64,000 nt of DNA from Oikopleura dioica (GCA_907165135.1 OU015566.1:5456001-5520000), one strand, 5' to 3'; positions 3,564 to 39,582 are shown, numbered from the stretch's first letter. Notes: a model not told the origin generated them from the letters alone. Numbers and translations are program-made.

Positions 3564-6348
3564 ATGCGAATTGTCAGTATTTTCTTTGTTAGCCCGTTGG
3601 TGGCCGCGCTACCTCATACATATGAAGAGGCCGAGCGCTACTGCAATATCGGAAGACATTATTCGACGGAATTCTGTCGCGAATTTCGCGGCGAGGAGGT
3701 CGTAAAGCGAGAGCCGACGACGAGCACAAGTACTACAAGTACGACGACTACGGCGTCGACTACAAGCACGACGTCGACTACAAGCGCGACGTCAACTACG
3801 ACGTCTACTACAAGTACGACCTCAACTACGACGTCGACTACAAGCACGACGTCAACTACTACGACCCGTCAAGAGCCAACTCAGGTGATGGGCGCGTCAA
3901 CGCTACCCGGCAATGATACGGAGGAAATTGTTACTACGGCCGAAATGCCTACGGCGGAAACAACAGTCGCTGCTTCGGACGGTCGACAAACAATTCCAAC
4001 ATTGACGATTCAATTGCCGGAAAGCGAAACAATAATTGCGAGTCCGAATGTAACGGTTCAAAGGTAATTTTTGTGCAATATGTATAAACAGCCGCCCGCA
4101 ATAAAATTCATTATAAACAAACAGCCGGTTTGATATCCTACCTCGAGCGCGGGGCCTACTTTTTTTTGGGGAACAGCGCATTTGTTTTGAACTTTGGCAT
4201 CACCAAAGATCGCCATCATGCGAGGCCCTGCTTTGGTATAAAAAGGGAGCGACTCAAAAACTAATTATCAAAATCAAAATCGATTCTTTTTCAAACAAAA
4301 CAAGAACAAGATCAACTTGAAACAATGAGCTGCCTTCCAGTCTTCAAGAAACTCGGCAAAATCCTCAAGAAAAAAGTCGGCGAGTACTCGCCCAAGAAGA
4401 ACGAGCCAGACAGAGAGGAACTCCTTTACTGCATTCGAAGACAGCCCATCGTCAAGAGCGATGGGTATGCCACGCTCCGCCGGTGGCCCGTGCAGGACAT
4501 GCATTCCTCGTTTCCGTTAGCCGAGGGGCGAAACTGGTCGTACACCCTAACCGCCTAAACCTACAGCTCCGCGCTCACGTACTCACTTTCTTCCCTCTCC
4601 GGTTCCTTATCACTTCTTATGACTCACACATCTCAACCTACGTAATCTATTCTAAAAAATCGTTAAAAAAATCAATAAAAATCTAGAAAATCGATAAAAA
4701 ATTTTTCTTTGTCTAGAAAATTCTAGGGGGCTGGGGATCTTCTATACCTGGAAACACCTGCACCTTGGGATCCCCCCGCGTAGATCAATGAAGCAATTTT
4801 GAGGTGTATGCAGGTATCGCCAAGGTGCAGGAATTTCCTGATAGGGAGGGATCTCAAAGCATAGAAAGTTTCTGACTAACGAATTTTTTCAGGCTGAACC
4901 AAACGACCGGTTACAACCTTTCAACCGGTTCTTTCGATTCGAGCAACTACAGTGTCGGCTTCTGGATTGTATTGACGCTGCTGATCGTGTTAGCGGTGTC
5001 CGTTTGGTGTTGCTGCAGTAAGGATATCAAGCGTTATGCGTGCAATGCCTGGGAGAGTGGCTGTGATTGGATCTACTCCGTGTGTCCCTGCTGCCCGGAC
5101 ATTGATGACGAGCAAGGCGACGGGTACCTTTTGGAACCGCGTGACTTGAGTCTACGATCTAGCTCAAACAGAGGAAGACCGACTGTAGTTGAGAATGCAA
5201 ATTACGTCAGAGGTAAATTCTGTCGATTGTTCACCAATTAATCATTACTAGGAAACGCGAAAAGTTCAAAAAACGCACCGCCTAAAAATTCGCGAATCGA
5301 GGAAGAATTTGAACGCGGCGGAAGCTCCGGCCCGCCTCGAGTTCCACCGCCGCCCGCTCCAACACGCTCTCGCGCGGCGAGAAAAAGCGCCAGCCGCCGC
5401 ACGTCTAAGCCCGCGCCCAAACGCATTCCAAAGCAACTTGTTCTTCCTCGACCCAAAACCTATGAGCCGAAATTCGAGTTTTCCCAATCGGACGATGAAG
5501 ACGACTGTTGCGAGACTTCGCCGCTCAACAAGCCGCCGAGCTGTACGGCACCCCCGCGCCCTAAACCTCCTCAATTAACGGTAGCTGCCTTTATTTTTGT
5601 TTCTTAAATTAATTTCGTTTAATAGAAAATCGAAACGGAGGAAGAAACCACACAAATCACAAAAGAGGATACGCCCCAGAATATTAAAAAAGAACCTAAT
5701 GAGGGTTCGTGGGTTTCGAACCTTTTCGGCAAAGCGTAAGTCTTTCCGCCACTTTGTCATTTTTAAAAATGTGCACTAGACTCAACTTAATTCCGGCTCT
5801 CCCCGCTCCAGTCCATCAAGCGGACGCAAAAGGTAATTTAATTTTCATAATTGCGCTGCTTAAAAATAAATTTAGTCGAGATAAAAAATGAAAAAGACTG
5901 CAAAGAAGAACTTGCTTGGTCGCCCCCAACCGCCGAAACCATCTTGGCCCAACCAAGCGTCAAAGTTGAAAATGAACAAATGACTCCTGTTCAAACTTTC
6001 TCCGCCCCGTCTCTCTCCTTGGCGGAAGTCGACCCTGACGAGAAAAATGCGCCTATCGTCGCACTTGCAGACACAACCGCTTTCAATGGTTTTGATGAAA
6101 CCGTTTTTCCCGTCGACACCACCGCCACCGCCGAGGGCGTTGACGACGGCGACAATGTCTCATTCTGCAGCGAAATTACGCCACAACAAACTCCAGAGCA
6201 ACCACATCGCGCACTTCCAGACATTGTGTCTGATCACGAGTCGCCAGTTATTGCGGCTCCAAAGTGTCCCTCGGCGCCCAAGAAAGAAAAAGTTATCTTC
6301 TCACGATACGGCCGCCGCGTGCAAGCACCAAAAAGATTCGAGTCTTGA
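3564..6348 (+). CDS. Type I membrane mucin-like glycoprotein with long Pro/basic-rich cytoplasmic tail
   Basis: Signal peptide MRIVSIFFVSPLVAA, Thr/Ser tract and sequons NDT, NVT, NQT, NLS, NYS. Intron 4064-4892 joins in frame to TM VGFWIVLTLLIVLAVSVW-CCC. Further exons run to the stop at 6348 (later joins less certain). Confidence 0.75.
3718..3865 (+). repeat. Coding ~18-bp degenerate tandem repeat (Thr/Ser tract)
   Basis: ACGACGTCGACTACAAGC-like units encoding TTSTTS. Confidence 0.85.
4237..4243 (+). promoter_or_regulatory. TATA box upstream of nested ORF
   Basis: TATAAAA ~85 bp before ATG 4325, preceded by the element motif TTTTTGAACTTTGGCA (4183-4199). Confidence 0.5.
4325..4558 (+). 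CDS. Small basic protein (77 aa) nested in the glycoprotein intron
   Basis: Intact ORF MSCLPVFKKLGKILKKKV..., with its own TATA, lying inside intron 4064-4892. Confidence 0.5.
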   Translation: MSCLPVFKKLGKILKKKVGEYSPKKNEPDREELLYCIRRQPIVKSDGYATLRRWPVQDMHSSFPLAEGRNWSYTLTA

Positions 6349-8358: not shown

Positions 8359-9438
8359 ATGGATAAGTTTAACCCCAAAAGACAAACCATGCGCCGCATA
8401 ATTTGTGTCCTTCATCATCGTTATGTTGCCTTTCAAATCGCCCGGAGAGAGAGTATGGACGAACGATGTAACGAGCTGCTCAAGCACAAGTCGATTCTAA
8501 ACGAAGAGTATCTGTCAGTAAAACGCCATCAATATAAATTGCTGCTACAGAAAAGTGAATACGACAGTGCCGATTTCAAACTTTATCGCGCGCGCCCCCT
8601 CGAATCAACCAGCGGAAGTGTTATTGAACATGCGCTCTGGAAACGTCAAGACGGTGATTATCACCCTGAAACACCAATATGTAGCAGCGGTGAAGATACA
8701 GACGACGGAATTCAAGACATTGAGGACGTCAGCTTGGACATTGAGCCGTCGATAAGCGACACAAGGTGCAAATATACAAATAATTAATATTTGATTCTTG
8801 TTTAGCAGAATATCCGCGGCGGCGCGATCAAGTGAAGAAAAAAAGCAATTGCATGTGCCGCCTCTACAAACTGCGCTGTCCCTTCTCACGCCAGTAACAA
8901 CAGCAGTAAGCAGTACTGCATGCACAACTGCAGAACAGAGTACGCTGAACCAAATTGTAAAAACTGCGGTCGCCAATTCTAATCTTCGACTCTTTACTGG
9001 GTCAAACAACACGCCCAGTCATCGAGTGGACAAGCTTCCAAAAATCGAACAACCGACAGACCTATCTTGTAAGCTCTTTTCACTCCTTCCCATAATTTAC
9101 TTTCAGTTTCAAATAAAATGCCGCCGCCGCAACATGTTCCGCCGCCGCCAAGTGTGCGGCCTGCCGTAGGGCCCGCCGTAGGGCCTGCCGTAGGGCCCGC
9201 CGTAGGGCCTGCCGTAGGTCCTGCCGTAGGGCAAGCCGTAGGGCAAGCCGTAGGGCAAGCTTTGTCTGCAGTACCGTCTAGGCCTACCGTAAGGCCTGTT
9301 GTCCCTCCTTTTCGCCCATCGTCAAACGAGAACATGTACAACATCAACGAGTGTGTTTATCAACCTTCTACTTCCACCGCCGCCGCCGCCGCCGCTTTAG
9401 AAAACTCTTTTGACCAAATGTTCAACAATTATCAGTAA
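8359..9438 (+). CDS. Multi-exon accessory protein with acidic and Pro-rich (PAVG)n regions
   Basis: ORFs 8359-8787, 8798-9169 and 9118-9438 are separated by short intron-like segments (~8766-8807, ~9069-9106). Exact joins were not checked. Confidence 0.55.
9160..9258 (+). repeat. 12-bp coding tandem repeat GCCGTAGGGCCT/GCAA
   Basis: About 8 units encoding PAVG/QAVG. Confidence 0.9.
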
Positions 9439-9535: not shown

Positions 9536-10517
9536 TTATTGATTCAACCAAGAGGGAGGATAAGTGAGTACAATTATTTGGAAACCAAGGATTCGGTGAA
9601 GTCGAACGTTGCTTTCTTTGTAAACATTTCGACGGAGAAACGTATTTTGCAGCAGTTTATCGGCAAAAGCAGTCGGCTCCAACTCGGCAAGCATTTGATC
9701 CAGGTCCTTTTCGTTTCGCAGTATTTCTGTATCGTTTAGGCTTCCCCATGTATTCGGGTACACTATTTCGTAGCGCGTGTCAACATATGACTCGCCACTC
9801 TCGTCGGTAAATGTGTTGCTACTTTTTGTAATGTACCACGCGTCGACCGAGATTCGCAACAGGCCGTTTAGATTTTCCGCAAGCTGCTTGACAATGTTTT
9901 GAACATTGGCATCGTTCAACAGCGAAATTGTATACTTGTTGCAGAGCTGTGCATAGCGGCTATAATAATCGCCACCCAACTCGAGTTGATTTTCACGCCA
10001 AGATTGCCCTGAATTTGTTTCCAAATATAAAAACCTACAAAACAAACGTATATAGTAAATTGGAGGAAATCGTAATGAGTCGGCCGCAGTGAGCATTTTC
10101 ATTTCTTCAGGTTGAAAGTAGCCCTTGGGTGGGTTTTTATGCGGGATCAGCTTGTCCAAGAATTCGCGATTGGCCTTGCTCCCCGTTCCGAGAAAATCGC
10201 CTTCGTAATTCCAATCTGGCACCGCTTTTGACGCAGGAAAACCAATTCATTTGATGGCGACTCAAATTAAATCGCGGATCGTCAATCTCATCCAAGTCGA
10301 CGAAGCGCTCAGGCGGATTGAATTTGACGCGAAGTCTTGAATCCCGACGCTTTCGGAAAATATAATCGACAATGTTTTCGCCTTCTTCAATATCCGCATA
10401 TGATGATGATGATGATGATCGTCTATTGTTAAAGGAGTCGTCTGTGTCAGCAACAACAGAGCCATTTGCTTTTTCCGACGGTTTCAAATAATTGAAAATT
10501 GTATTCTTTGAGCCCAT
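9536..10517 (-). CDS. Putative stand-alone terminal-protein-like gene (one frameshift near 10225)
   Basis: ORFs 10137-10517 and 9536-10222 join by one base at GTCAAAAGCG. The C-terminal pattern (ILRNEKDLDQMLAEL...SNVRLHRILGFQIIV) resembles the N-terminal region of Polinton pPolB. Confidence 0.45.
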
Positions 10518-10556
10518 TCTGAAAAAAGAACAAACCTTACTTACAAAAACATTTAA

Positions 10557-13500
10557 TTAGACAAATGTGTTGTCAGAGTAGATCAAAGGTGATGTGGAAA
10601 TTTTGTCGTCGGCTACAAGACGTTTTTTAAGCACATTGTTGAATACAGCACGATTCATTAAAAATGTTCGCATTCTGTCTCGCTTGCGATCCATTTGCAT
10701 GACGGGTACATCCTTTCTGATTTGACGATTGTAATCGGCGCCAAACACGGCGGCAAGATACTCGTAATGGCTGTGACAGTGTATTTATCAAATCAGTTTT
10801 TGCACTTACCCAAGTTGAACTTTTTCTTGCAACCTTTGGCAGATTTTTTGACGACTTTTGTTGGCACAATATCCTCATCCTCCATCTGCGCCAAAATGTC
10901 CAAAACGCGATACTCATTTTTAGGATCACAAATTTGCCCGTCCATATCGCAGGGCTCTTTCTCCACCATGGCATAACATTTTGGACTCGGAGCCAAAAAC
11001 CAGCCCGATTTTATTGAGACTTCTTTTAAGCAGACCGGGCTCCTTTTGTGAAGCATCGTCACCATCGACGGCAAACCATGCCGGGCGAATCTCCTTTTCC
11101 CACTTGTCTTTGAGTTTTGGATTGACGCACTTGTGCACGCTGTCTTTTGTCAACGCCAGTATAAAGGAATCCGTATCAGCATAACAAAACTTGTACGAGC
11201 CGGGCATCAAATAATCGCGCAAAATCTGTTCAAATTGCATAAACAACAATTTTGAATTCTTTTGAAGGAGGATCGACACTCTGAGACTGGCGGGGTCCGG
11301 GGGTCCGGGGCGGAGCCCCCGAGGGCTATGGTTGCCGGCCGTACCGGCCGGCGGGGGTCTGGGGTTGCCGTGCCGAAGGCACGGCCAACCCCCAGTCGCA
11401 CAAGGTTCCGGACGACCGGGCCAGGCCTGGATGGAGCCGTGCCGTGCCGTACGGCCGGCACGGCCACCAGCCAGGTTCAGGCCAGGGAGGACGGCAGTTT
11501 TGGTTGTTGGTGGTGCGGGTGGTTGGTTGGTGGTGGTTGGGTTTGGTGGCGGGGTTTGGTGGTTGGTGGTGGTTATTGAGGGTTCAAGCTTACAGAATAT
11601 TATTCAAAATAGGCGTAGAGCAAAGCATTTTGGCGTTTGGGTTGACAAAATTTGAAATTCTTTTCTAAAATACAAGCGCGCGTTATGGTGATTGTATTTG
11701 TCGAAAATGACATTTGTTTTGACCTTTGGCCGCAATGGTTGATTTTGGTTGCCTTTGTTTTGATCTTTGGCAGCATTGGTGGTTCTGGGTTGCCTTTGTT
11801 TTGCTCTTTGGCAGCATTGGTGGTTCTAGGGTGCCTTTGTTTTGATCTTTGGCAATTGTGATTTTGCACCAACAGAATTCAGGAATCATTCTGCCGTGGT
11901 TTCCGATAATGAGGGTTCATTTCTAATCCTAGTAGAATGGCGTCAGGGTATTCCTGCTGTTCATCCTGTATCATTTTACTCAAATTGCCAGAAATTAAAA
12001 AAAATTTATAAAGATCTTTTTTAAAGGGTTGTTATGGTTTTTGAAAAAACATTTGTGAGAAGGGGATTCGAACATAGAGGGTAAGCATTACGACCAGCAA
12101 GCGTCAATCTAAGAGTACTTTTGCTCGCTATCGCCGCGTTACTTCAATAGTACCGCCGCAATAGGGAACAGGGATTGGGCTGATGAGAGGGAGGAGAGGG
12201 GAAAGGAGAATGGGCTAGTACAGCTCAAATTTAGCCGCCTTACGCTCTGCTTTAGCTCTATATCCACTCGGCCATCGTTCACGGTCCTCCTTTCCTGATA
12301 GACAAAGATTTGAATCGGCAAGGCCAAATCTTCGGTAACATTCTTTTTTCGACGAACAATCTCATGCAGCGGATCTAATGCAACATCTTCGACTCTTAGC
12401 TGTTTTGTTGATTTTAACATTGGCGAACGTATTGCATCGTACATTTTATCGGCGCCGACAATTGAGCAAGAAAGAAAGCGGTAGACGGCCAAAGCAAAGC
12501 GGCCAACCATTGCATTGAGAATTAATTTTATGACAAGTTGAAGACCCGCGTTTTTCTTGCTCAAAGCGGTTACGCGATCCTTGACCATGTTTGCAACAAA
12601 TTTTTTGAATGGAGCTCCTTTGTAGTACTCGACAAAGTAGTGAACTTTAATCTTGACGCCTTTGTTATCAAGAAACTCTAGCATTTCGCTGGTTGCCATG
12701 TAATTCTTTGCATTGTAGCAAAACACATTTTCTTCGCTTGGATAAAGTCGCTCCACGGTTTTTTGCGGAAGAACGCGCTTCATATAACCATTGAGTGTGT
12801 CAGTCGTTAGCTCCGTTTTTGCAAAGATGGGCGGAATAAACGGATTTTCATCTATAACTTTTTGCGTCGAAGAAAGATCAACAAGCGCAAGTCCAAAGAA
12901 TTTTTTCGCGCGCAAAGCTGCCAAAAAATCTTCTTCCGTCACACCAGGTTTGCCTGGAATCATGCCGCTAAAATTTGGCTTCGCTCCTTTATACAAAAAT
13001 GGATAAGTTGGCGAGTGTGGCGCTTCATTTGCAAATTCAGCATTTGTCCAAATTTTCAGCCATTGACACGCGTAAACAATGACAATCTCATGAGGAAAAT
13101 TAAGAGGACCTTCTTGCTGTAAAAGATCGTCTTTGTCCTCGCCAAAAATTGGATCCAATTCAAAGGGCAAGTAACCTGCCATTATGGCCTCTTCGCGAAG
13201 AGTGTCAACAATGGCGTGCATTCGGGCGTCATCCTCTGCTTGCAATTGCTCTGGAGTGATTTCCTTGTAGATTGGCTTCCCACCAACTGATGCGACCTTC
13301 TTTTTGCATCCTCGCCAAGGTTTACGCTTACAATGCGGGCACGTATGATAAGAGCAGCCTCTAAATTCGAAAATAACTTTTTTTCGTATTGGGTTCGCAT
13401 CATCGTCGCCGTAAATATGATAGAGACGATTTGTCCCGCTAATAAACTCATCCAAAACAGTGTATCCGTCAACATGATGCCTGCCAATCTTCTTTTCCTC

Positions 13501-16500
13501 ACCATTGTACGAGTGCTGTATTTTACCGTTGTACGTTTTCCAATTCAAATATTCAAGCCATCGAATAGATTCCAAAGATGTGTTTTGCTTCTGCGCGTAA
13601 AGACCGTCATTGAAAAAACGAACTTCGCCATCTTTATAATCAGAGCTCGCTGTTATGGGCGCTTGAAATCTCGAGTTATTAACGTGACCAAAAACACTAT
13701 TTAAAGTGTACAGTATGCCAGGGCCAAGGGGGAGATTTCTAGCTACAGCCCATGGATAAAGTGAATTAAAGTCGAGCCCTTCCAAATAGACGTACCGTTC
13801 GCCATTTGGCGCATGCGTTGCGGCCTTCGGAATGCGCGGATCGTCGTGCCTTTCATTCAAATATATTGCGCGATGAAGAACTTGGCAAATTCCACCTTGA
13901 AGCTTTGCTCGACAATCTTTGTAGTAAAACGCCGCCTTTGGTGGCGGAGAGTAGATTGGCGGGAGCTCGGAGTCATATTGCATCAGCGCAATTTTCTGGG
14001 CCATCTTCGCTATTGACAAATCCGCATGAATTCCAAGACCAAATTTTGTCTTATAGTTTTCGGCGTAAGCGTCAATACTTCCCGTCAATAATTTTACATC
14101 GTTGAAATTGTTGTTGATAAGGAATATCATCATTGTCATTTTTTCACCGTCGCCGGGGTTCTTACTCTCCAAATCGGCAACCATTCGCTCCCACAATTCT
14201 TTATTTTCGTTGTATTTTTTTGGTTTGAATCGAAAAAAATCTCGCACCGCGGGATCGTTTGGATCGCATTGATGGCATCGAACCTCTGGGTCGTAGATGA
14301 ATTTCTTTCCTAAAAATCTAACATGCTCATCGACAATTGATCGTGGAGTTCTGTTATTTTTATCGCACCACTCTTTTAGCACCGGATCGTCAAGAAGATT
14401 TCTCAAGCACAACCAGTCAGACAGCTGGCATATAACCGCTTCGTCACGTTGCCAACGATCTTCACTTGTGTCTTCGCACTTTTGCCGAATCATAAGATTG
14501 ATCTTTGCGGCGTATTTTGAGCCCTTGTTGAGTGCGCCACTTCCCATTGTCGAATAAAAGCACGTATACGCAGGAAAGCGTTTTGCAGCTTCCAGCTGAT
14601 CAACTCGGGTATACCATTCATATGGAAATGAACCCTTGGTGTATTCGTCGGGATTGAGCCCCATTGATCGCGCCAAATCGGCCAAACTTCCTGGTGCAGA
14701 GTAGTTTTTGAAATCGCGAAAGCTCAACCCAGCCGCATCCAAGAGCATATAACCACCGTCGCGTTTGATTGTTGAAATTTGCTGACTTTGCTTGCCCGAA
14801 AATTCGTAGAGCACAGATACAAGCATTGGATATAAAACACATAAATCGTATGTTTCCCCATACCACGAGTAAATTTTTAATTTGTAAAAATCACGCAAAT
14901 AATTTAGCTTTTTGCGCATCGGAACGAGTTCATCAAACGAATACTTGCTTCGTTGCTCTTTATCGCCCAATTCTTTTGAATAAAAATCGACTCCATCCTT
15001 GATCATTTGCGGGATTTCGGAAATCATCTTGTCGCGAAGTTGCTTCAAGTAATTGACAAATTCAGCCAACATGACAAGAACCGAGCTATAATCCATGTTT
15101 TTTCTTTTAAAAGCGCGTCTTTCTCCATCACTTGTCATGCAGGCAAGAGTCGCCAAGTTGTGAAATTTTCGTTCGTCGTTAAATTCACATGTTTCCGTTT
15201 TTAACATTCCCTCGCTCATAAGACATTCGATATCATAAGTGCAATAATAATCCTGCGTATAAGAAACAGACGGTAAGTAGTTTTCATCGACTAATTCTTT
15301 GACAAAGTCAATAACACGGGGTCCAAGAACTGATTGACGAATTCTGCAGGATGTCTCGGCTGTGCAATTTTTACGTGTGCACGCATATAAGACGCTTTTT
15401 GATGAGAGTAAAGACAGTTTTTAGTCGGGCAAACAGGCATATCGATAACTTCACCACGATGCAAAATTCGGCAGAGAGTGTTGTCGCTAAAAACATTTGG
15501 CACAAGTGCCGCCAAATTTCGAATCGGACGATAAACAGCATCATCTTCCCTCTCATCATACGAGTCATATCCATCACAATCGTCGGTCCCGTCAGAGTTG
15601 CAGTCATCTTCTGCAGCCATCGAGTCAATAAACGGGTTTGCGCCGAGGCCCCCGTCATATTCCTCAAACTCGCCTTCATCAAGAACAACACTTTCATTGT
15701 CGTTGTCGTCGGTTTCATAAGTTGCGCCTTCGACAAGCCCCGCGGCATCCACATCGCCTTCATCAATAACATTTGCGGCAAAACCGCGATCCGCGTCAAG
15801 GCGTCGCTCGCGTTGATATTCGCCATCCGCTGCAAGAACGGGATTGCGCCACGGGTTCCGTCGTAATTCGTTGTAGGAAACTCCCGCAAATTTTTTAAAT
15901 TCAATCTCGAATTCGTCCGGAGTATAACTTCCAACAAGCAAATTGAGCGGATTTTTTCCCAAGATTGGTTTTGTGGCGTAGAAACACACTTTGTTGTTAA
16001 CATTGTCGTTGACAATTTTGCCAATAAAGAGACGAATTGGCAATTGGTAACGTGTTCTTATGCGTTGAAAAACACCGTCGGCAATACTAAACATTTCGCG
16101 ATCATCGATGCACATCTCACGTTTGACTTCGACAATTTTTTCGTCTTGTTCGGTTTTGTTCAATTTTGGCCAACGATATTTTACAATAGCTCGCCACAAA
16201 TTTATCCAGTCGCGGTCCCGCTCCTCAGCGACTTTTCGTGTTGGAATAACGTAAAAAGGACCAAGTGTATGAAAATAGGGGCGAGCACTTTGCAGAATAA
16301 CAAGCGGTCGATCAACATGTTCGTTGTTGGTGTGGCCAGACTCGTACTTTTCCAAAACGTTGCGAATGCTCAACACTTCAGCCGTTCTACTCGGTCTGTA
16401 TGATATACCAAGTGGGCTGTATTTTCCTCCATACAATAGATACAAATCAATATTTAAGAACTCTTCAATTTTTGGCAAATCCGCTCTTGTTGGTTTAGGC

Positions 16501-16841
16501 CCAAATCTAACCTCCAGCATTGACGTGTTGCATTTTAAAAGATCGTCCTTAAGTTCTTGGTTGATTGTGGTTGGCACCTTTGGAGCAATTTTTTGAAGAA
16601 AATTCCACCAATTTTTCCCAAATAAAAGCGCGTGATAAATGTTTGTCGTTTCTAAATCAATGTTTCGCATTTCTGTGCCAGTTCGAAATTTCGTTCCTTC
16701 CGCATAAGAAGCAAGAAAACGCCGTTTTTTGTTTTTATCAGCATTGGATAAGCCTACAAAGATTAACTTGTAATCACATCATTTTCTCTTTAATTTACCT
16801 TCTTTTGTTTTTTTATCTGGATAGAATCTTGAAAGTTTCAT
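10557..16841 (-). CDS. polB: Protein-primed family B DNA polymerase (pPolB), ~1700 aa, spliced
   Basis: ExoI TYDIEC (just upstream of ORF 12139-15219), GLDFNSLYP, KLILNAMVGRF, YADTDS, KSAKG, and an internal VDG...EFRGCSYH..C nuclease-like insert. Introns 16798-16754, 12294-11259 and ~10810-10772. Frameshifts at ~15370 and ~11025. Confidence 0.93.
11259..12294 (-). other. 1036-nt GA-AG intron/insertion in the polymerase palm
   Basis: Removal restores ...FVYQ|NSKLLFMQF...YADTDS. Starts GAAAGGAGGACCG, ends CGATCCTCCTTCAAAAG. Confidence 0.8.
11715..11855. repeat. 41-bp tandem repeat x4 inside the polB intron
   Basis: TGTTTTG(A/C)(T/C)CTTTGGC starts at 11715, 11756, 11797 and 11838. Confidence 0.9.
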
Positions 16842-19165: not shown

Positions 19166-21011
19166 AGAAACGCCGGTTGAGCGCCGCGCCGCGTGCATCA
19201 TGGAGCGTAAACGTCGGAACAAATGTGCCCCAATGAATTTTAACAATTTTATAAAGTTCGGCGGACCAATTTGCCGTTGCTCCCTTTTTAAAAGGATTTT
19301 TTCCAAGCGCATTCACTGGAATTCGGACCAAGTCCCCGATGTAAAATTTTGTTCTTGTTTTACGGGCCCCAATATTTCGACGTTTTTGCTCCAAAATCCG
19401 TCTTTTGGTGGCATATCAATAGCATTGTGTACAGTTGCGTTATACATCGCATTAATATCTTGAAGGGCATGAATCCAGCGCCGCAAACCATTGTGCTCAT
19501 CAAAATAACGCTGCAGTCTCCCCTCGAGCGTTTGACTAAATTTTATTAAAATCTTCAACAGCGACGTAAACTTACATAAAGCGCTCTGCGATTGATGATT
19601 TATGACGCCCTCGAAGTTGATGAGGAGTTATTTGCCATTTCTCCAATAGCGGCAAAACGGCTCCTTTAAATTCATTGCCGTCATCGACCATAAGAAACGT
19701 GTGACCGGGTAAATCCAAGCGCTTTATGATGTCTTCAAGCGCTGCAGCCGTTTCTTCCGCCGTCTTGCGCTTTAGAGGGCGTACAAAGCTCTGACGTGAT
19801 AAACCATCCACAACAACAAGAATATATCTGTAGCCATTATTGATCTCAACATCGTTGGCGAACCATTCACAAGTATCAGCAAATAGACAAGTATAAAGTC
19901 CAGTCGCAATAATGGGATTACGGCGAAAACGTGATTTGTAGGGTTTGTGCATTGAGATTGTTTTGTTACGACGTTTAAATTTTGCAAGATCCATTCCACT
20001 ATAAGCAGAAGCGTTTTTCAAATTGTAAAAAAGATTTGCAGATGGCGATGTTGTGCCCGGTTCATTGCCAAAAGTTTTCCACATCGCTGATCGGGGACCC
20101 CTCATGAGGCGTGGATCCCTGCTCGCTTTGCTCCGATTCGTCCGATTGTTGAGCAGTTGTTGATCCTCTGGGCGGTTCGAATTCAGTAACCACTCGTTTT
20201 GATTTCTTTGGTCCCTTTGCGTAGGAAACATGCGGCTGTTCGCTTCCGGATTCGTTGTCACTGATGACAATGTACTTGCTTTCGTCGCTGTCGTCGCCTC
20301 TCGGGCCTGGGGTTGCCGCACGTTTTCGCTCAAATCTGACTCTTCGAAATCCATCATCTCGACGTCTTCGTTGTTGTCGTTGTTGGTTTGCATACTGCCG
20401 AATGATTCGTAGTTCATGTTCGAGTCGGCGTCGCTTTGCATATTCGCGTCTTGCAAGCCACTCAAACCTTGACGCTTCTCCGACCACTGTTGGGTGCCAT
20501 TCTCGTCGATTAGCGGATCTGTCGAATTCCACCATCCGGTGTCGCTCTCGGGGAGCTCTTGAATATCTGGGAGTCTCTGATTCAATTTCTTCAACGGGGG
20601 TTCGCTCTCGCCTGTCATCATGGTTAGAAACGAAATTCCCCCGGTTCGCGTGATCAGAGCGGGCGCTACTACCGGCGAAGCGCTTGTTGGTGACGTTGGA
20701 TCTCCGATTCCAATCTTGTTCAGATTGTTGGATAGATTCATTTGCCATGAAGCCGCGATTTCCAGTGGGTTCTGACCCGTTGCCACTTGCTGCGCGTTTG
20801 TTTTGATCTTTGCCAACGCGCTGTCCATCGGTTTGGGTGTCTCGACCGACCCCGTTCTTGCGATACTCGGGGTCGTCTGGAGTGTCGTCCCAGTCGGAAA
20901 AGTCGTCGTAGTCTTCGCCAAATTCTCCGAGAGCCTTCGATTTCCCAACGGGATAAACTCGGTCGCATATTCGTCCAAGTAAGCCGGCCGTTTTACTCGC
21001 CTCTTCGTCAT
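19107..21011 (-). CDS. Retroviral-type (rve) DDE integrase of Polinton class
   Basis: ADT...YRYILVVVDGLSR, VDDGNEF, AERF|IQTL (40-nt intron 19575-19536), YNATVH, GDLVRI..FKKG..NWS..FYENEL. One frameshift near 19380. Confidence 0.92.
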
Positions 21012-21141
21012 AGTCTGGATAGGGAGAGCCTTTTGTTTTTGGAGCGGTAAATCGTATTTCACCGGTATCTGGATTTGTTTCGTACTCGGAACAAAAATGG
21101 TCTATACAGTCAAGCGGGATGCACGCGTACGGATTTGGCAT
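20062..21141 (-). CDS. 359-aa acidic/Arg-rich protein overlapping the integrase 5' region in another frame
   Basis: ATG-initiated uninterrupted ORF with an Arg-rich helix (RREYAKRRRLEHELR...QRRRRDD). Confidence 0.6.
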   Translation of the reverse strand: MPNPYACIPLDCIDHFCSEYETNPDTGEIRFTAPKTKGSPYPDYDEEASKTAGLLGRICDRVYPVGKSKALGEFGEDYDDFSDWDDTPDDPEYRKNGVGRDTQTDGQRVGKDQNKRAASGNGSEPTGNRGFMANESIQQSEQDWNRRSNVTNKRFAGSSARSDHANRGNFVSNHDDRRERTPVEEIESETPRYSRAPRERHRMVEFDRSANRREWHPTVVGEASRFEWLARREYAKRRRLEHELRIIRQYANQQRQQRRRRDDGFRRVRFERKRAATPGPRGDDSDESKYIVISDNESGSEQPHVSYAKGPKKSKRVVTEFEPPRGSTTAQQSDESEQSEQGSTPHEGSPISDVENFWQ

Positions 21142-24010: not shown

Positions 24011-24397
24011 TCGTTTGGTTTCGGCCACAATTTTTCGTAGCTCCGAAAAATTCTACCACAAAAAATATTTCTGCCTGACTGATACTAAAATTACCTGTTT
24101 TTTCATTTTAGTGTTGTTGTTAGCCTGCAAAAATCAAACTGATTTAAATTTCTGCCAAAGATCAAAACAAAAGCCGTGTTCTAGAAAATTTTTTCATTTT
24201 TATTGTTGACATTGACAAAAAAAGAAAATAAAAGACAATAACACTCAGTAAAAAGTCAGGGAGCTTTTCGCCATCAATGTTCGTCGTTTTGCGTCTTCAT
24301 AAGCGAAATAAGCAGATGCTTCTTTAATTTCACAGATTATGACTCGTCGTCGGGCGAGGCTGAGATCTTAAAAAAGTAAAGAAAGTGGTCGACATTT

Positions 24398-26570: not shown

Positions 26571-26763
26571 AAAGACCCTTCATTTTCTGTATTCTGAGCA
26601 CTGTACATGTTGAACAGTTCTTTATTTTAGGCGTTTATTTATCTGCTGCTGCGAATTGTTTATAGATCGCTCATTATGTATTATTTTCATCATAAAATGC
26701 GAAAAAATAAAAAAAGTCATCTGAAAATTTCTTAATTTTGTGTTAAAAATAATGGCTGGCCAA

Positions 26764-26939
26764 TGTTTTGCTCATTGACAGCACTTGTTTAAAACTGGGT
26801 TAATGTTTTGATCATTGACAGCACTTTTTTAAAACTGGGTAAATGTTTTGATCATTGACAGCAGGTTCAATTCTTTAAGCATATGTTTTTATCTTTGGCA
26901 ATGTTTCTGCACAAAAACCCGATATTTTGCTCTTTGGCA
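26764..26939. repeat. ~40-bp-phased array of the element motif (5 copies)
   Basis: TGTTTTG(A/C)TCATTGACAGCA at 26764, 26804 and 26844; TGTTTTTATCTTTGGCA at 26884; TATTTTGCTCTTTGGCA at 26923. Confidence 0.85.
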
Positions 26940-29350: not shown

Positions 29351-29664
29351 CTTCCTCTCTTTACAAGTCCCTATCTCCTTAAATTTTTACTGGGGCCGAA
29401 ATATTTTGATACCGAAATCGAAAAGCCGCTTGCGGCTTCGAGCTAAAAATAATGGAATAGCCGCGCGAGGCGCGGCTTTCATTTGAGATCACCAAAACGG
29501 ACCAAATTGTAATAGTAATGGTCTGTTCTGATGATCACAAATGAAAGCCGCGCCTCCCGCGGCTATTCCATTATTTTAGCTCGAAGCCGCAAGCGGCTTC
29601 TCGACTTTGGTGTCAAAATATTTTGGTCCTCTATTTTAGGAGATAGGGGCTAGCAAAAGAGAAG
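29351..29664. mobile_element. Foldback/MITE-like palindrome (~310 bp)
   Basis: Arms such as AAGCCGCTTGCGGCTTCGAGCTAAAAATAATGGAATAGCCGCG match their near-perfect reverse complement across a ~25-bp loop. Confidence 0.75.
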
Positions 29665-33188: not shown

Positions 33189-33421
33189 TGTAAGCGTCTA
33201 AGTACTGCTGTATGCTCTCTATACTAGACGGTTCTCTTGCAGCTAGTCGTAGCCTCTACTGTATCTTCAATAAAACACGAGGAAAGGTAGTTTCCGAAAA
33301 AGCGTGTATTCTGCACTTTTACTGTGCGCGGACTGAAGCAGTGAACGTAAAAGTGGCAGAGAAGAGCGCGGCGCGAGATCCTGATCAGATCTCTAACCGA
33401 CTTAAGCACTTAGACCTCACA
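33189..33421 (-). repeat. 3' LTR
   Basis: TGTAAGCG...CCTCACA, identical to 39583-39815. A short purine tract GGGGAG lies adjacent on the minus strand. Confidence 0.95.
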
Positions 33422-33691
33422 GCTCCCCAGATTCTAGAGACGTTTCGAGAATCTTCAGTTGAAGAGTTGAAGTCGGGAAGATGAGTCATCGTAGTAGAGC
33501 AGAAGGGAAAGGAGAAAGGAAAGGCGGCCAATCAGCACAGCGCGGCGTCGGAATTGCACCAGCGTAGAGACGAAAAGTCGAGAAAAGTCGGACGAAGATC
33601 GAACCATTTCCGGACAGCGACAGCCAATCAGAGCGCGAGAAGAAGTAGACTCGCGCGAGACGAGTTTTCTTTTAAGAAAACTTCTCCTTTT

Positions 33692-36600
33692 CTACGAATA
33701 ACTCTTGCGAGTTGGGTCAACTTGAATCAGAGAAGGTTTTTTCCTGATTCGGCCACCACGGACGGTCAAATTTTCGAAGATGGAAGAAAGATCAGCTGAC
33801 GAAGATGACGAAGACAAATGATGTCCATTTAGAGAGTCTGCCGCACTACAACGAGGAGCAGAAGTCGTCTCAACAGGTAAATCTTGAACATCATTTTCTA
33901 CCAAGTCGGTCGAGCGAGGCGTAGTTGAAGTTGACGTTGATGGGGCGGGCGCGGTCGAATTTCTAGCAGTCGAGGGAGGAATTGAAGCAGTATTTTGACG
34001 CTTCGGATCAGGTGACGAGTCGGGACTCGCCCTTTTCCTCTTTTTTCTAGTTGATTTGCCAGAGGTTGTATTTTGCTTTTCAGCAGCCGGCCTCCCAACC
34101 TTTGGTAATTTTGCTAGAGGTTCGGAATATGAACCTGAAGCGCCGACCGGTCGATTTTGAGGAGAATCAAGATCATCGCCACAGATGAGCTCTTGTTCTA
34201 AAGCACGGTCGGAGGGAGATTTTAGATGATCCTTGCGCGGAGGTACCAGACGCAGATGAGATCGGTGGACCCAGTCACAAAAGTCGGCTCCGTCGACGAT
34301 TTTAACCACGGATTCGGAGGCTTTGACGACTTTGTAAGGGCCTATCCAGTTACAGTTGGAGTCCTTGGCAGCCTTAGTGACGGGTCTGTAGAGATGAACC
34401 ATGTCGCCGTATTTGAGAAGGCGAGCGCGATGAAGACGCTTATGTTGGCGTTCCAGAGCCAGGTCAGCAGAGCGGTTGGCGATTTTCGCCAATTTCGAGA
34501 GCATTTGAATCCGCTTTCTGACGATTTTGCCGTAAGATTCAGGCGAGTTAGAGCGTACATCGGGGTCATGTAGAGTTTCAGGAACTGTGAAGTTAGGACG
34601 ACGGCCAGTAACGAGAGTATGAGGTACCTGACCAGTAGACCTGTTCCTGTGAGAGTTCATGAAGGCGACGCAGTAAGGGATAGCATCAACCCAAGTCATG
34701 TTTCGCTCATGAGTCAACATAAAAACCATGTCCTTGAAGGTTCTGTGGGACCTTTCAAGATTACCAGTAGATTCAGGGCGATAAGCGGTGTGATACTGCG
34801 GCGTGATACCAAGTTGAGAGTAGAGTTCCTTCATAGTAGCAGAGACGAATGCGGTACCACGGTCAGAACTGACGATTTTTGGCACAACTTGATGCCGTAG
34901 AACCACCTCTTCGACGATTGTGCGTGCAGCATCGATCGCTCGCTCCCCAGTGCAAGCTCGAGCGACGAAAAATCGCGTGAATGTGTCGAGCACGGTGCAG
35001 CAGAAGCGTTTGCCAGCACAGTTGGGGAAGACGGTGAAGTCGATCATGATCGTTTCGAAGGGCTTAGAGCCGCGGGGAACATGTTGCATTTGAGGTAGAG
35101 CCACTTGCCCTTGGTTACCTTTACGCTTCGCGCAAATCATGCAGCTCTGCACGTAGTTTTGTGCATCTTCCATGTAGCGAGGCCACCAGTAGCTGCTGAG
35201 AGCTTCAATAACTCGAGGTACACCAGGGTGAGCTGAGTTGTCATGAGCTTTTCGAAGTTGCTCGATCGCGAGTTTAGGCGGTAAAACTTGGCGCTTTTTA
35301 CCATTGCGCACGTGGAGAAGTACATTTGTACGGGAACAAATGCGGAAATGCTGCCAGTTGACGCGATACAATTCGTAGTTAGAATCGCGTTTGTCGAGTA
35401 GAACTTGCTTTGGGTCGCGTTTGTGCTTTTCAAGAGCATCAATGAGCTTTGCCAAACCCGAGTCGGCGCGCTGGGCATTAGCAAGTTGAAGTAGATCCTC
35501 GACATTCTGGTTGAGGGTGAACTCGTCGCCAGTGGAGCATGTAAGTGCGCGAGTGAGACCTTCGCGGAGCGGTTTCGAGGAGAGGATTTCGGCGGGATAA
35601 CAGTATCCTTAGTACACCAGCTGGGGATGTAAGCGCGGAGGCCACCGAAGTCGACAAATTTACCGGCTGACTTCTGATTGTCAGACGGAGGGTCCTTTTG
35701 ACACCGAAGGGCCGCGAGAAGAGATCTGCCCAGACGTTTTGCTCGCCAGGGAGATACTCGACGATGAATCTGTACGCGCTCAGTTCGTCCATCCAGCGAG
35801 CCAGTTTTGCGTTCTTGTGGTCAACCGAGTCAATATATTGAAGAGCTCGATGGTCGGTTTTCACCACAAAGGGCTTGCCGCGTAGGAAGTACTGAAATCT
35901 GCGGACGCCAAACAAAATGCCATAGGCCTCGCGTTCCGTGCAGCTCCAGCGCTGCTCGACGGAAGTGAGAGTTTGAGAAGCGACGCCGACGATTCTATCG
36001 AATCCATCTTGCTGTTGAAGTAGGACGGCGCCGACGGCAACTGCAGAAGCATCAGTGCAGAGAAGAAAGTCGAGTGAGGGATCGGGAAACGAGATGACTG
36101 GGCTTGTACGGAGCCGCTTTTTCACGCGCTCAAAAGCTTCCTGGGCTTTTGTGGTCCACGTGAAATCGCCATCTTTGTTGAGCTGGTTGAGCTGAAAAAC
36201 AAGCTGCGAGAAGCAACTTGTGTCGATCCGCTCGGACATTCGAGTTTCGAGGAATTCTCGGATGAAGGTGAGCTTGCCGAGAAGTGCGCGTAGTTCAGTG
36301 CGATTTGTGGGTTGAACAAAGGCATCAACTCCAGCGACATATTCTGGGTCCACGGACATGCCCTTAGGCGAGACGATTCTACCCAGGAATTTCACCTGGG
36401 GCGCCAAAAACTCGCACTTTTTCGGGTGTAGACGCAGTCCAAATCGCCTGGCAGCTTCGAACAGGCTGGTAAGCTTCGCCAGGTAGTCGGAGAAGGATTT
36501 GGCTGCCACCAAGACGTCGTCGATGTAGCAGAATATGCCAGAAGTGTCGGGGAGAGATTCTAGGGCCTCGCCAACGCACCTTGAAAAATTTGGCCTGCGG

Positions 36601-37846
36601 TGGCGAGGCCAAATGGGAGCCGACGATATTGGAAGGTGCGACCGTTCCATGAAAAGGCAGTTTTGTGCCTGTCGTCGGGGTGGATTTCCACTTGCCAGTA
36701 GCCACTCTTCAGATCGAGGCCGGCAAGGTACTTGTAGCCCGGGCGCATTTCGTTGAAGAGCTCGCGCAGGTTGGGCATGTGATACGGGTCGGGGTCGACG
36801 AGGACTCGGTTGAGCGTGTTCTTGAAGTTAGCCACAGGACGCGCGGAGCCATCCTTTTTCGGGACGCAGAACAGAGGCGAGTTGAATCCACGTGGATCGG
36901 AGCAGAGCTCAGTGACGCCAGTATCGAGCATTTCTTGGACGTGCGTGTCCATTGAGCCTCTGAAGTTGACTGGGATCTGGTGCTGCTTGCGGCTGACAGA
37001 TTCACCATTTGTCGGGATTCGGACGGGTCTGTAGAACAGGCCAAGCTCGTCAGTAGAACTTCCAAAGACGTCTTCATACTGGACACAACGAAGGGCGAGT
37101 TCATGAAGTTCGCTTTTGTTGTGGTGGTTGGCTGGAAGATCGAGCTCTTTCTGGCTTCGCAAGTAGCTCAGAAGGTCCGAAGTAGAGGCATTGGGGCCTG
37201 GAGCAGAAGGTTTGGGCTGTTTTTGAGCAGCTTGAAGAGAATCAGATCGAAGAGCGTCAGCATAACTACGAAAATCTGCGCTGCTGGAAGTTCCAGAGTC
37301 GATCTGAGGTGCATTCCAAGGATCACTAGCGTACGACTTGATTTCGAGTGCCTGTGTGTAGATTTCTGCTCCAGGGCTATCTCGTCGTTGAAAGATGACT
37401 TTGGTACCAGTTCTACCAAAGGAGACATTTGTGGCGTGATCGGTGACAGTTCTGCCGATGAGTGGCGGCGCGTTATTGCCATCTGTCACAAGAATGCGGA
37501 TTCCAGCGAATTTGATGCCGCTGAAATTAATAGTGGTGCGGAACTCGCCTAGGGCCTTGGTTTCGGAGTTGACGCCAGTGACGGTGAACTTTGAGCTCTG
37601 CAGTTGCTTCAAAAGTTCGTCAGGGATGAGCCGTTTTGGCAGTATTACATCGTCGGCGCCAGTGTCGAACATGCCGTTTTTGACGGTGAAAGTATGTCCG
37701 GCGAGGGTGACAGTGAAGTCAGCGTACCAGGGTCTGGAGGGTTTGGAGAAGGTGAGTTGCGCGGAAGAAATGAGGGGAGAGTCAGAGCTGCGCCGATCTA
37801 ACTCTCGATGCGAAAAACCGAGTCGGTATCCTTCGTAGCAGCGCAT
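33692..37846 (-). CDS. pol: Pol polyprotein PR-RT-RH-IN with three single-base frameshifts in homopolymers
   Basis: FDTGA (protease), LPFGL/YIDD (RT), TDAS..EREAY (RNase H), HHCC plus IDF/SDRG/LERSH (integrase). Shifts near 36580, 35695 and 35590. Confidence 0.93.
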
Positions 37847-39033
37847 CCGGCTTTGGATTCGGACTGGTTGTTGTTGGACTTGTTGCCGTTGTTGTTTTTG
37901 CCTTTTTTGTTGCGCCCGTGGCCCTGGCCTCCTTTTCCGTTGGACTTGTTATTGTCCTTAGCGGGGACGACGGCTTTAGAGATCGCGTTGACCTTGTCAG
38001 TAAGGGTTCTGATGCATTTCTGCATCGCTGCGATCTCGTCGTTGGGCTGAGAGGTCTTTTCGAAGGTCTTGCCAGCGAGGGCGACAGATTCTTCGGAAGT
38101 GACGCTGCTTGGGAGACGGTCAAGTAGAGTTTTCGCCTTCACAAACACGTCCTGGGCGTTGGAGCACTCGTCGATTGTGTCGCAAAGTCGAACTCCGACA
38201 TTTGGGTAGGCGCGGCAAACAGTGAGGTAACCCAGCGTGGCGGCGTAGAGATCGTTGAGCTCAGAAGCTGTAATAGCTTCGCCATCAGCGGCTTTTGTGG
38301 ACTCCTCGGCAACTATGGAAACCTCAGGTTCTTCCTTGACGGAAGCTGTTTTGGCGGATTCGGCGGCTTTTCGACGAGCCATGCGCTCAACTTGTCGAAA
38401 GCTGTGTCTAGAGGCCTCCTGAAGTTCATTGAAGTAGACGCCTAGGCCTTTGGAGGCGTCGAAAGTGACATCGTGCGGCTTGCGGAGCTCCTGAAAGATC
38501 GACAGCTTGCTACTGAAGTTGTCTTCAATGGCGGATATCAGCTGTTCGATGGTCCGGGTCTCGAGGCCAAGTCGCTGAAAAGTGACCTTGACATCGTTGG
38601 CCAAGAACTTCTTGGCAGTGCGAGCCAAAATTTCATCGCCCTCGGCTTGATGAGCCTTTGGAAGAGTGGCGACGTGGTCGGTTCTGGCCGTTCGGAGCGT
38701 AGAAATGAACTGCTCTGCGTCGGAACCAGTGGAGAAATCATGGACTTCGAGCTTGTCCAAACAATTCTGGATCTCGATTTGGCGAGTTCGAGAGATTCCA
38801 GTGGACTGAGCAGAAGATCCTGACTTCGACAAGGCAACAATTCGGGCACTGATCAGCTTTTTGCGTGCGTTGATCCGGTCAGTGTAGCTTGAGAGTTCGG
38901 TTGGATCCGATGCAAGCTCCATAGTATAATCCATGATATCGGACAAGAAGTTGGTCAACATGGTGATGCAGGTGCACGAGTTGATTTGATCTTCGGAGAG
39001 GTTGAGCGCGTAACAGGCGCTGGTAGAAGACAT
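37798..39033 (-). CDS. gag: Gag-like protein
   Basis: 411-aa ORF downstream of the 5' LTR/PBS, overlapping pol in the -1 frame. Confidence 0.8.
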   Translation of the reverse strand: MSSTSACYALNLSEDQINSCTCITMLTNFLSDIMDYTMELASDPTELSSYTDRINARKKLISARIVALSKSGSSAQSTGISRTRQIEIQNCLDKLEVHDFSTGSDAEQFISTLRTARTDHVATLPKAHQAEGDEILARTAKKFLANDVKVTFQRLGLETRTIEQLISAIEDNFSSKLSIFQELRKPHDVTFDASKGLGVYFNELQEASRHSFRQVERMARRKAAESAKTASVKEEPEVSIVAEESTKAADGEAITASELNDLYAATLGYLTVCRAYPNVGVRLCDTIDECSNAQDVFVKAKTLLDRLPSSVTSEESVALAGKTFEKTSQPNDEIAAMQKCIRTLTDKVNAISKAVVPAKDNNKSNGKGGQGHGRNKKGKNNNGNKSNNNQSESKAGCAATKDTDSVFRIES

Positions 39034-39582
39034 TTTGGCGGGCCGAGATGTCGTTGGAGATATGGATCGGCGAAGTTCGCGGGGTTTCGTTGGCGGGACT
39101 GATCAAAATCGGCGGCGCGGCGTAACGGAATTTGCGGTAAAGGGTTCACAACGAAGAAATTGTACCTTTACGGAGCGCTCAAGTAACTGGAGTTTTCCTT
39201 GAGCGGCGCACGTGGCGACTTTTTCACGTAGTGTGTGTGTTCCAGGTGGCCGGCGGCGAAAAAATGAGCAATTCAGGCGCGGTCGGAGACGAGTTCCACG
39301 GTGTTGCGGCGATAAATGCGGCAGTTAGGGTTTGACAACTTTGACTGACCTCGTTAGAGCGCACAGAAGGGTTACTGTGCGGCGCGCGGACGCGACTTGA
39401 TTTACGAGCTCCAGCGGTTTATCGAACACGGGAACGGCGAAAGATCGCTCGATCGACTTGGCGAGTGGTCGAACCAAGTTTAATAACACTTCTAGCTTTG
39501 CAGCGGGAAGTGCCGGTGATGAGGGCGAACGTTGGGTTCGGAAGAGTCCAGTGAAGAAGAAGCTTAGCGTATTGTCACCAGA

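What the first reader, a model, noticed from the sequence alone, without database searches (positions are those of the whole stretch)
11259..12294. Polymerase palm split by a 1-kb non-canonical GA-AG intron with self-complementary ends
Removing 12294-11259 gives TAT CAG|AAT TCA = YQ|NSKL and rejoins motif B (KLILN) with YADTDS. The 5' end GAAAGGAGGACCG is an imperfect reverse complement of the 3' end CGATCCTCCTTC, and AG is duplicated at the junctions. It may be an introner-like transposon that splices out, or a hairpin that juxtaposes weak splice sites and acts as an on/off switch for viral replication. Without splicing, the ORF reads on and stops at 12139, losing the catalytic DTD.
Basis: partly seen in the sequence, partly recalled or inferred. 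Interest (0 to 1): 0.85.

Follow-up and report, generated by a model that had tools for sequence, protein, structure and literature searches.

The report
Conserved GA-AG intron in Polinton polymerase
The 1-kb stretch that splits the DNA polymerase gene of a virus-like Polinton element in the tunicate Oikopleura dioica is most likely a real intron of this host's common GA-AG type, kept at the same codon by a whole clade of these elements; it is not a one-off insertion, and a hairpin switch is not supported.

Summary
The window is Oikopleura dioica (Okinawa assembly, chr1) and carries a Polinton/Maverick-like element with a protein-primed family B polymerase gene on the minus strand.

The two polymerase pieces abut relatives without a residue gained or lost. 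The unspliced frame stops at 12139. The ends of the interval carry an 11-nt, 10/11 inverted repeat.

New evidence comes from relatives:
- Eight related polymerases in five clusters, from O. dioica assemblies and marine metagenomes, leave the alignment at the same residue and continue with Glu or Asp, which means GA.
- Five separate short ORFs read in from unrelated sequence that ends in Lys just before the same next residue.
- These interrupted copies form one clade (bootstrap 100/100), about 60% identical to each other, with long open upstream frames.
- At least 14 more distant relatives are uninterrupted.

GA-AG is the usual non-canonical intron type of this animal. So this is an old, lineage-wide spliceosomal intron.

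The transposon and hairpin-switch readings are weakly supported: end complementarity p≈0.004, no target duplication, no other copy in the window. This copy also has three other frame changes, so it is probably dead. The public gene model splices differently and looks wrong. No RNA data were available.

The parts
10563..16670 (-). [quoted passage not shown] It holds an N-terminal domain, the polymerase, the intervening sequence and the C-terminal part. The gene is broken in this copy: three frame changes besides the intervening sequence, at least one of them a single-base frameshift. Their places are not listed.
   Evidence: Pfam DNA_pol_B_2. P0001 is 100% identical and relatives are 37-59% identical. 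N-terminal domain homology. Outer bounds and counts of frame changes. The public model P0001 spans 15096..9539 in 3 exons.
11259..12294 (-). Intervening sequence (the finding's own interval), 1036 nt. It is a phase-0 GA..AG intron candidate between motif B and motif C.
   Evidence: Relatives are interrupted at the same residue, with GA-type read-on and AAR-type read-in.
12282..12292 (-). 5'-proximal arm of the terminal inverted repeat. It is purine-rich and starts 2 nt inside the interval.
   Evidence: the repeat finder I12, 10/11. Pairing probability with the 3' arm is 0.4-0.7. The centroid fold keeps the helix and the MFE fold does not.
11265..11275 (-). 3'-proximal arm of the terminal inverted repeat. 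It overlaps the pyrimidine tract just upstream of the terminal AG.
11713..11854 (-). 41-nt tandem repeat, 3.5 copies, inside the intervening sequence. A 20-nt core of it recurs elsewhere in the element.
   Evidence: (D8).
11518..11566 (-). 13-nt low-complexity repeat (C/A-rich on the minus strand) inside the intervening sequence.
11329..11473 (.). Cluster of G+C-rich palindromes and hairpins in the 3' quarter of the intervening sequence.
   Evidence: I1-I3, I5, I7. Local stems.
9536..10222 (-). 228-aa ORF downstream of the polymerase. It is joined to the polymerase only in predicted models (P0001, P0008, P0015). Relatives of the P0012 type end before it.
19572..21062 (-). ORF with a weak retroviral-type integrase core match, on the same strand as the polymerase.
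   Evidence: Pfam rve, E=1.3e-5, 25.8 bits, below the gathering score of 32.6.

Best explanation
The interval is a spliceosomal intron of the GA-AG class, which the U2-type spliceosome of Oikopleura dioica removes routinely.

It sits in phase 0 between motifs B and C of the protein-primed polymerase of a Polinton-like element. It was gained once in the ancestor of one clade of these elements. It has been kept at the same codon boundary while the polymerases diverged to about 60% identity and the intron interior changed freely, from about 0.2-0.7 kb in sister copies to 1.0 kb here.

On this reading, a full polymerase with the catalytic DTD motif can come only from a spliced nuclear transcript. 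Unspliced RNA ends 51 codons into the intron.

Shown: the position, the register, sharing by relatives, the clade structure and the open upstream frames.

Inferred: that splicing happens, and that the conserved G(+1), A(+2), G(+5) and terminal AAG are splice signals.

The copy in this window has three more frame changes and is probably no longer coding, unless these are errors of the Nanopore-based assembly.
For: - Host: O. dioica OKI2018_I69 chr1.
- GA-AG introns: 11-12% of this host's introns are non-canonical, mostly GA-AG, and are removed by the major spliceosome (PMC4122922; PMC8008620).
- Junction: seamless against 15 uninterrupted relatives. Only the GA..AG register changes no residue.
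- 5' side: P0002, P0003/P0096, P0004/P0097 and P0005/P0098 stop matching at the same Q and go on with E or D. Where the tail is longer, R follows. That means G+1, A+2 and G+5.
- 3' side: P0013, P0099, P0035, P0105 and P0103 read in from unrelated sequence that ends in K right before NSKL, as the window does.
- Direct reading of DNA: P0002, P0003, P0013, P0035 and P0105 are metagenome ORF calls, which do not splice, so these tails translate the DNA as it stands.
- Clade: the interrupted copies form one clade, 100 of 100 bootstraps, at 58-78% pairwise identity. Upstream frames stay open over about 975 residues, which argues for selection after the gain.
- Splice-like ends: the exon ends in CAG, and a pyrimidine tract precedes the terminal AG.
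Against: - No transcript evidence was available.
- The intron is about 20 times the host's median of 49 nt.
- The public AUGUSTUS model, built with RNA-seq hints, does not use this junction.
- Sharing by relatives is read from proteins only. Their DNA was not fetched, so exact nucleotide positions, lengths and end sequences in sister copies are inferred from codons.
- This copy itself is broken elsewhere.
Confidence: 0.7

Rival explanations
1. The interval is, or recently was, a mobile introner or MITE-like transposon with terminal inverted repeats. It inserted into the polymerase gene and is spliced out because it brings or creates splice sites.
For: - There is an 11-nt 10/11 inverted repeat 2 and 6 nt inside the ends, rarer than in slid or shuffled controls (p about 0.004).
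- The interior is repeat-rich, with no ORF of note.
- Transposon-derived non-canonical introns are described in the related larvacean Fritillaria borealis (PMC11282704).
- Transposon insertion is listed as a source of Oikopleura introns (PMC3443670).
- Introners occur inside Polinton-like elements of dinoflagellates (PMC12166617).
Against: - There is no target-site duplication beyond the dinucleotide AG.
- No second copy lies in 64 kb, apart from a 20-nt repeat core.
- Sister copies carry an intervening sequence at the same site whose translated interior is unlike this one. That fits one old gain followed by drift, not a family of recent insertions.
- 16 similar inverted pairs occur in the same 1.15 kb.
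- An ancient transposon origin of the intron is not excluded.
Confidence: 0.12
2. Pairing of the two ends forms a hairpin that brings weak splice sites together, or hides them, and so acts as a conditional switch for polymerase production.
For: The end helix AGGAGGA/UCCUCCU has a pairing probability of 0.5-0.7 in the fold of the full interval and is kept in the centroid structure. End-pairing introns exist in Amoebophrya (PMC7789003).
Against: - The MFE structure pairs the 5' arm elsewhere, because several other pyrimidine tracts compete for it.
- The helix would cover the 5' splice-site region and the pyrimidine tract.
- The read-in tails of P0013, P0099, P0035 and P0103 are not pyrimidine-rich just before the junction, so the feature does not look conserved.
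- This copy has other frame changes, so there is nothing here left to switch.
Confidence: 0.07
3. The interval is a simple inactivating insertion that is never spliced. It is shared only because dead copies were duplicated.
For: This copy is otherwise broken. There is no RNA evidence. Public gene models read into the stretch and stop.
Against: The interrupted copies differ by about 40% in protein sequence, yet five lineages keep roughly 975-residue open frames upstream. GA at the start and AAG at the end are kept in every copy seen. Neutral decay would have scattered stops and erased these ends.
Confidence: 0.05
4. The public gene model is right. A 655-nt GT-AG intron lying wholly inside the interval is removed, and the two flanks of the interval are translated as part of the polymerase.
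For: P0001 threads onto the window in exactly this way: 3 exons, both introns GT-AG. The source pipeline used RNA-seq hints (PMC8008620).
Against: This model puts 127 residues with no counterpart in any relative between motifs B and C. Its second intron of 1027 nt skips polymerase sequence that relatives match. Both look like a predictor bridging frame changes.
Confidence: 0.05

Closest known systems
G*-AG (mainly GA-AG) non-canonical U2-type introns of Oikopleura dioica (Denoeud et al. 2010, as reviewed in PMC4122922; 11% in the Okinawa assembly, PMC8008620)
   Same: Same host. Same terminal dinucleotides. The removal register is precise. It lies at a lineage-specific position, as newly gained introns of this class do.
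   Different: It is 1036 nt against a median of about 49 nt. It sits in a gene of a virus-like mobile element, not a host gene. Splicing is not shown here.
MITE-derived non-canonical introns of Fritillaria borealis (Henriet et al. 2019, as summarised in PMC11282704)
   Same: The host is also a larvacean tunicate. Those introns have inverted-repeat ends and are removed by a permissive U2 spliceosome.
   Different: Those introns are mostly AG-AC or AG-AT, have clear TIRs and TSDs, and occur in many copies. Here the ends are GA-AG, the repeat is weak, there is no TSD, and no family was seen.
Hairpin-ended introner elements of Amoebophrya (PMC7789003)
   Same: They have 8-20 nt complementarity between the two intron ends and short direct repeats across the boundaries.
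   Different: Those are repeated families in a dinoflagellate with variable splice dinucleotides. Here there is a single locus type, a fixed GA..AG, and a direct repeat of only 2 nt.
Introners inside Polinton-like (eupolintoviral) elements of dinoflagellates (PMC12166617)
   Same: An intron-like sequence resides inside an integrated Polinton-like element.
   Different: Those are recognisable copies of host introner families, mostly acquired after integration. Here the intron is older than the diversification of a whole element clade and has no known family.
Vertebrate Mavericks/Polintons (PMC8097293)
   Same: Same kind of element. A protein-primed polymerase is shown and the integrase match is weak. 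Most copies are mutationally degraded.
   Different: Intact vertebrate elements were reported to have intronless genes. This tunicate clade carries a conserved intron in the polymerase.

Membership tests
U2-type spliceosomal intron, Oikopleura G*-AG class | Starts with G (here GA) and ends with AG | tested here: met
   Sequence read. Register enumeration.
U2-type spliceosomal intron, Oikopleura G*-AG class | Its removal leaves the conserved protein register intact | tested here: met
   The pieces were compared apart. The end of the upstream piece and the start of the downstream piece fall on adjacent residues of 15 relatives.
U2-type spliceosomal intron, Oikopleura G*-AG class | Position and splice-site bases are conserved in related genes while the interior is free to vary | tested here: met
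   Read at protein level only. Eight relatives have E/D (then R) read-on. Five have read-in ending in K. Their interiors are unlike the window's. They form one clade, 100/100.
U2-type spliceosomal intron, Oikopleura G*-AG class | Spliced junction seen in RNA | not testable with these tools
   No transcript collection was on hand. No protein in the databases with near-identity to this copy spans the junction, other than the differently spliced model P0001.
Introner / MITE-derived intron | Many similar copies at unrelated loci of the same genome | tested here: inconclusive
   No copy was found in the 64-kb window. The rest of the genome could not be searched.
Introner / MITE-derived intron | Terminal inverted repeats flanked by a target-site duplication | tested here: not met
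   The inverted repeat is 10/11 and lies 2 and 6 nt inside the ends, p about 0.004. Only AG is repeated at the junctions.
Hairpin-ended introner (Amoebophrya type) | 8-20 nt end complementarity plus 3-5 nt direct repeats across the boundaries, in repeated families | tested here: inconclusive
   Complementarity is present. The direct repeat is only 2 nt and no family was seen.
Polinton/Maverick | [quoted passage not shown] | tested here: met
   Pfam PF03175 above its cut-off. Relatives carry PF03175.
Polinton/Maverick | Retrovirus-like integrase in the same element | tested here: inconclusive
   The rve match has E=1.3e-5 but scores 25.8 bits, below the gathering score of 32.6. No PDB match by sequence.
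Polinton/Maverick | Capsid and maturation genes, long terminal inverted repeats, 6-bp target duplication | tested here: inconclusive
   Neighbouring ORFs had no Pfam, PHROGs or PDB match. No long inverted repeat brackets the region. The element may run off the window start.
Self-splicing group I/II intron or other known RNA | Match to a covariance model | tested here: not met
   Rfam at permissive E-values gives only chance-level rows. ARAGORN finds nothing.

The most novel reading that the evidence does not exclude
The intron is more than a passive passenger. Either its end-pairing helix makes polymerase production conditional on host state. Or the stretch is an intron-generating transposon that travels with Polintons between larvaceans, which would make these elements carriers of new introns in an animal lineage famous for intron turnover.
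Probability: 0.07. Interest if true: 0.75.

Novelty: new variant of a known kind. Interest (0 to 1): 0.45.

Why it matters
Polinton/Maverick genes of animals have been described as intronless (PMC8097293). A clade that has kept a host-style GA-AG intron inside the catalytic core of its own replicase would matter in three ways:
- These elements would be expressed through the host's nuclear transcription and its unusually permissive spliceosome.
- The intron would give a simple presence/absence marker for tracing this clade in larvacean genomes and marine metagenomes.
- It would explain why automatic annotation fails on these genes. Every public model seen either reads into the intron and stops, or splices it wrongly and adds 127 spurious residues.

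It does not, on present evidence, reveal a new splicing mechanism or a replication switch.

Tried and rejected
- Rfam on the interval at permissive thresholds gave only chance-level rows.
- ARAGORN on the whole window found no tRNA.
- PDB sequence searches with the polymerase half, the 545-aa ORF, the 361-aa ORF and the integrase-like ORF gave no hit.
- Pfam and PHROGs on neighbouring ORFs gave nothing beyond the polymerase, a weak rve match and the LTR-retrotransposon domains.
- A search for long terminal inverted repeats of the Polinton found none.
- A search for a second copy of the interval in the window found only a 20-nt core of its tandem repeat.
- Denoeud et al. 2010 is not held in the library. 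My recollection that it discusses repeat-ended new introns stays unverified and is not used as evidence.
- Canonical GT donors near the 5' end were considered and rejected because they would lose 3 or add 4 residues that no relative lacks or has.
- The public model's GT-AG intron was considered and rejected as biology.
- P0007 was labelled 'uninterrupted' in the tree, but its state at the junction is in fact undetermined: its alignment ends earlier and it has no match to the downstream piece.

Full report
**What the window is**

The polymerase query returned a 100% identical public protein, P0001, named Oidioi.mRNA.OKI2018_I69.chr1.g1460 of Oikopleura dioica. The host is therefore a larvacean tunicate, an animal.

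The minus-strand ORF 12139..15219 carries Pfam DNA_pol_B_2. An ORF about 4 kb upstream on the same strand has a weak integrase-core match, below Pfam's gathering score.

Every comparison was done piece by piece, by reference.
- The public model P0001, itself a joined product of its source's predictor, was used only to thread its exon structure onto the window and as a database hit.
- I fetched no DNA of related copies by look-up, pattern or accession. All evidence from relatives is at the protein level.

**The observation**

- The unspliced frame runs 51 codons into the interval and stops at 12139.
- The KLILN stretch lies in the upstream piece and YADTDS in the downstream piece.
- The upstream piece (window:12295-15219:-) aligns to relatives through its last residue. 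The downstream piece (window:10929-11258:-) begins at the very next residue of P0006 and P0008.
- Thirteen further relatives read straight through the same point.
- Among in-frame G*..AG pairs near the ends, only the GA..AG register gains or loses no residue. The nearest GT donors lose three or add four.

**The complementary ends**

The repeat finder reports 11-nt arms, 10 of 11 complementary, 2 and 6 nt inside the ends. The same 1.15 kb holds 16 comparable pairs. A slid-interval control reaches the score in 0.4% of cases and shuffled ends in 0.3%. The helix has a pairing probability of 0.5-0.7 in the full-length fold and survives in the centroid structure but not in the minimum-energy structure. 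So the repeat is real but not compelling.

**The decisive evidence: relatives share the interruption**

- On the 5' side, P0002, P0003, P0096, P0004, P0097, P0005 and P0098 align to the upstream piece up to the same glutamine. They then diverge, starting with Glu or Asp and, where the tail is longer, Arg. In nucleotides this fixes G at +1, A at +2 and G at +5.
- On the 3' side, five short ORFs (P0013, P0099, P0035, P0105, P0103) begin with unrelated residues that end in Lys immediately before the same Asn-Ser-Lys-Leu. The window's own frame does the same.
- Several of these are metagenome ORF calls, which do not splice, so the tails are plain translations of DNA.
- P0105's cluster and P0003's cluster each list a 4151-nt contig as their longest.
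- The end of P0002's read-on tail matches the start of P0105's read-in. Those sister inserts are therefore related to each other and are only about 0.2-0.7 kb long. Neither resembles the window's 1036-nt interior in translation.

**Phylogeny**

I built a neighbour-joining tree on the 520 residues upstream of the junction. It puts all eight interrupted sequences, the window included, in one clade in 100 of 100 bootstrap replicates. Pairwise identities within the clade are 58-78%.

Uninterrupted relatives lie outside this clade. They include the continuous metagenome ORFs P0006 and P0009. P0007's state at the junction is undetermined.

The simplest history is one gain in the ancestor of the clade. 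After about 40% protein divergence the upstream frames are still open over roughly 975 residues in five lineages. Neutral decay would not allow that. It would also be pointless if the catalytic motif downstream were never joined on.

**Context from the literature**

- In O. dioica 11-12% of introns are non-canonical, mainly GA-AG. They are removed by the major spliceosome and are enriched among newly gained introns (PMC4122922; PMC8008620).
- What is unusual is its home. Intact vertebrate Mavericks were reported to have intronless genes (PMC8097293).
- Introners inside Polinton-like elements are known so far from dinoflagellates (PMC12166617).
- Transposon-derived, repeat-ended non-canonical introns are known in the larvacean Fritillaria and in Amoebophrya (PMC11282704; PMC7789003).

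**Against the transposon and switch readings**

- There is no target duplication beyond AG.
- There is no other copy in the window.
- Sister copies have unrelated interiors.
- In several sister copies the residues just before the junction are not those a pyrimidine-rich arm would encode.
- An ancient transposon origin cannot be excluded.

**State of this copy**

Besides the intron, the polymerase gene shows three frame changes against relatives. At least one is a single-base frameshift, seen against seven of nine relatives. I give counts only.

The longest single-base run in the zone of one of the frame changes is 4. The assembly is Nanopore-based, so residual assembly error is possible but unproven.

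**The public model**

It removes a 655-nt GT-AG stretch inside the interval and a 1027-nt GT-AG stretch further down. The first choice inserts 127 residues that no relative has. The second skips sequence that relatives match. I regard this as a predictor's bridge, not biology.

**Verdict**

The intron reading is supported by comparative evidence, with confidence about 0.7 and RNA evidence lacking. The introner and hairpin-switch readings are weak.

- While reading a translation I once placed one frameshift relative to a protein motif in my reasoning.
- Note 3 gives the bounds of the upstream ORF, as the ORF listing printed them, and says it lies in another frame. That brackets one frame change to a short stretch.
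- I recalled two generic consensus motifs from memory in my reasoning: internal promoter boxes of tRNA-type genes and the metazoan 5' splice consensus. I used neither in a tool call and write out no letters here.
- The 20-nt pattern was copied from the output.

Noticed in passing
window 33189-39816: An LTR retrotransposon on the minus strand with 234-nt LTRs that are 100% identical (D3). Its ORFs carry aspartic protease, reverse transcriptase, RNase H and integrase domains. It is markedly G+C-richer than its surroundings, so it is probably a recent insertion.
   Followed up: partly
window 4177-4196, 20793-20812, 24156-24175 (and 11750-11851 inside the interval); 26762-26863: The 20-nt core of the intron's 41-nt tandem repeat recurs at three other places in the Polinton-like region: 6 matches against 0.02 expected. 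A related 40-nt tandem repeat lies at 26762-26863. It could be a regulatory or satellite motif of the element that was copied into the intron.
   Followed up: partly
window, upstream part of the polymerase gene (within 10563-16670): A 459-residue ORF upstream of the polymerase ORF is 36-51% identical to the N-terminal 300-430 residues of relatives' long polymerase proteins. In the continuous metagenome ORF P0002 both parts are one frame. Here they are in different frames. The domain has no Pfam, PHROGs or PDB match.
   Followed up: partly
window 9539-15096 (public model P0001): The public gene model bridges the polymerase with two GT-AG introns of 655 and 1027 nt and includes 127 residues translated from the intervening sequence. 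Sister-copy models P0004/P0097 and P0005/P0098 read into their intron and stop. Annotation of this gene family is systematically off.
   Followed up: yes
window about 12060-12270 (5' quarter of the interval): Two short motifs about 190 nt apart recall the internal promoter boxes of tRNA-type genes, which hints at a nested SINE-like or tRNA-derived piece. ARAGORN and Rfam find no tRNA there, so this is an unverified lead.
   Followed up: partly
window 40315-42650: Two tandem copies of a roughly 1.25-kb unit, 85-95% identical (D4-D14).
   Followed up: no
window 52693-53822: An 11-nt tandem array (8.9 copies, 53707-53804) lies next to 53-nt inverted repeats at 52913-52965 and 53645-53697. This is a MITE-like layout.
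   Followed up: no
window 29393-29629: A long nested palindrome with arms of 56-59 nt, 89-92% complementary (I1 and I2).
   Followed up: no
window 3717-3863 and 9158-9256: Coding-like 18/30/48-nt repeats lie inside ORF 3564-4067, and a 12-nt tandem repeat (8.2 copies) lies just downstream of the polymerase region.
   Followed up: no
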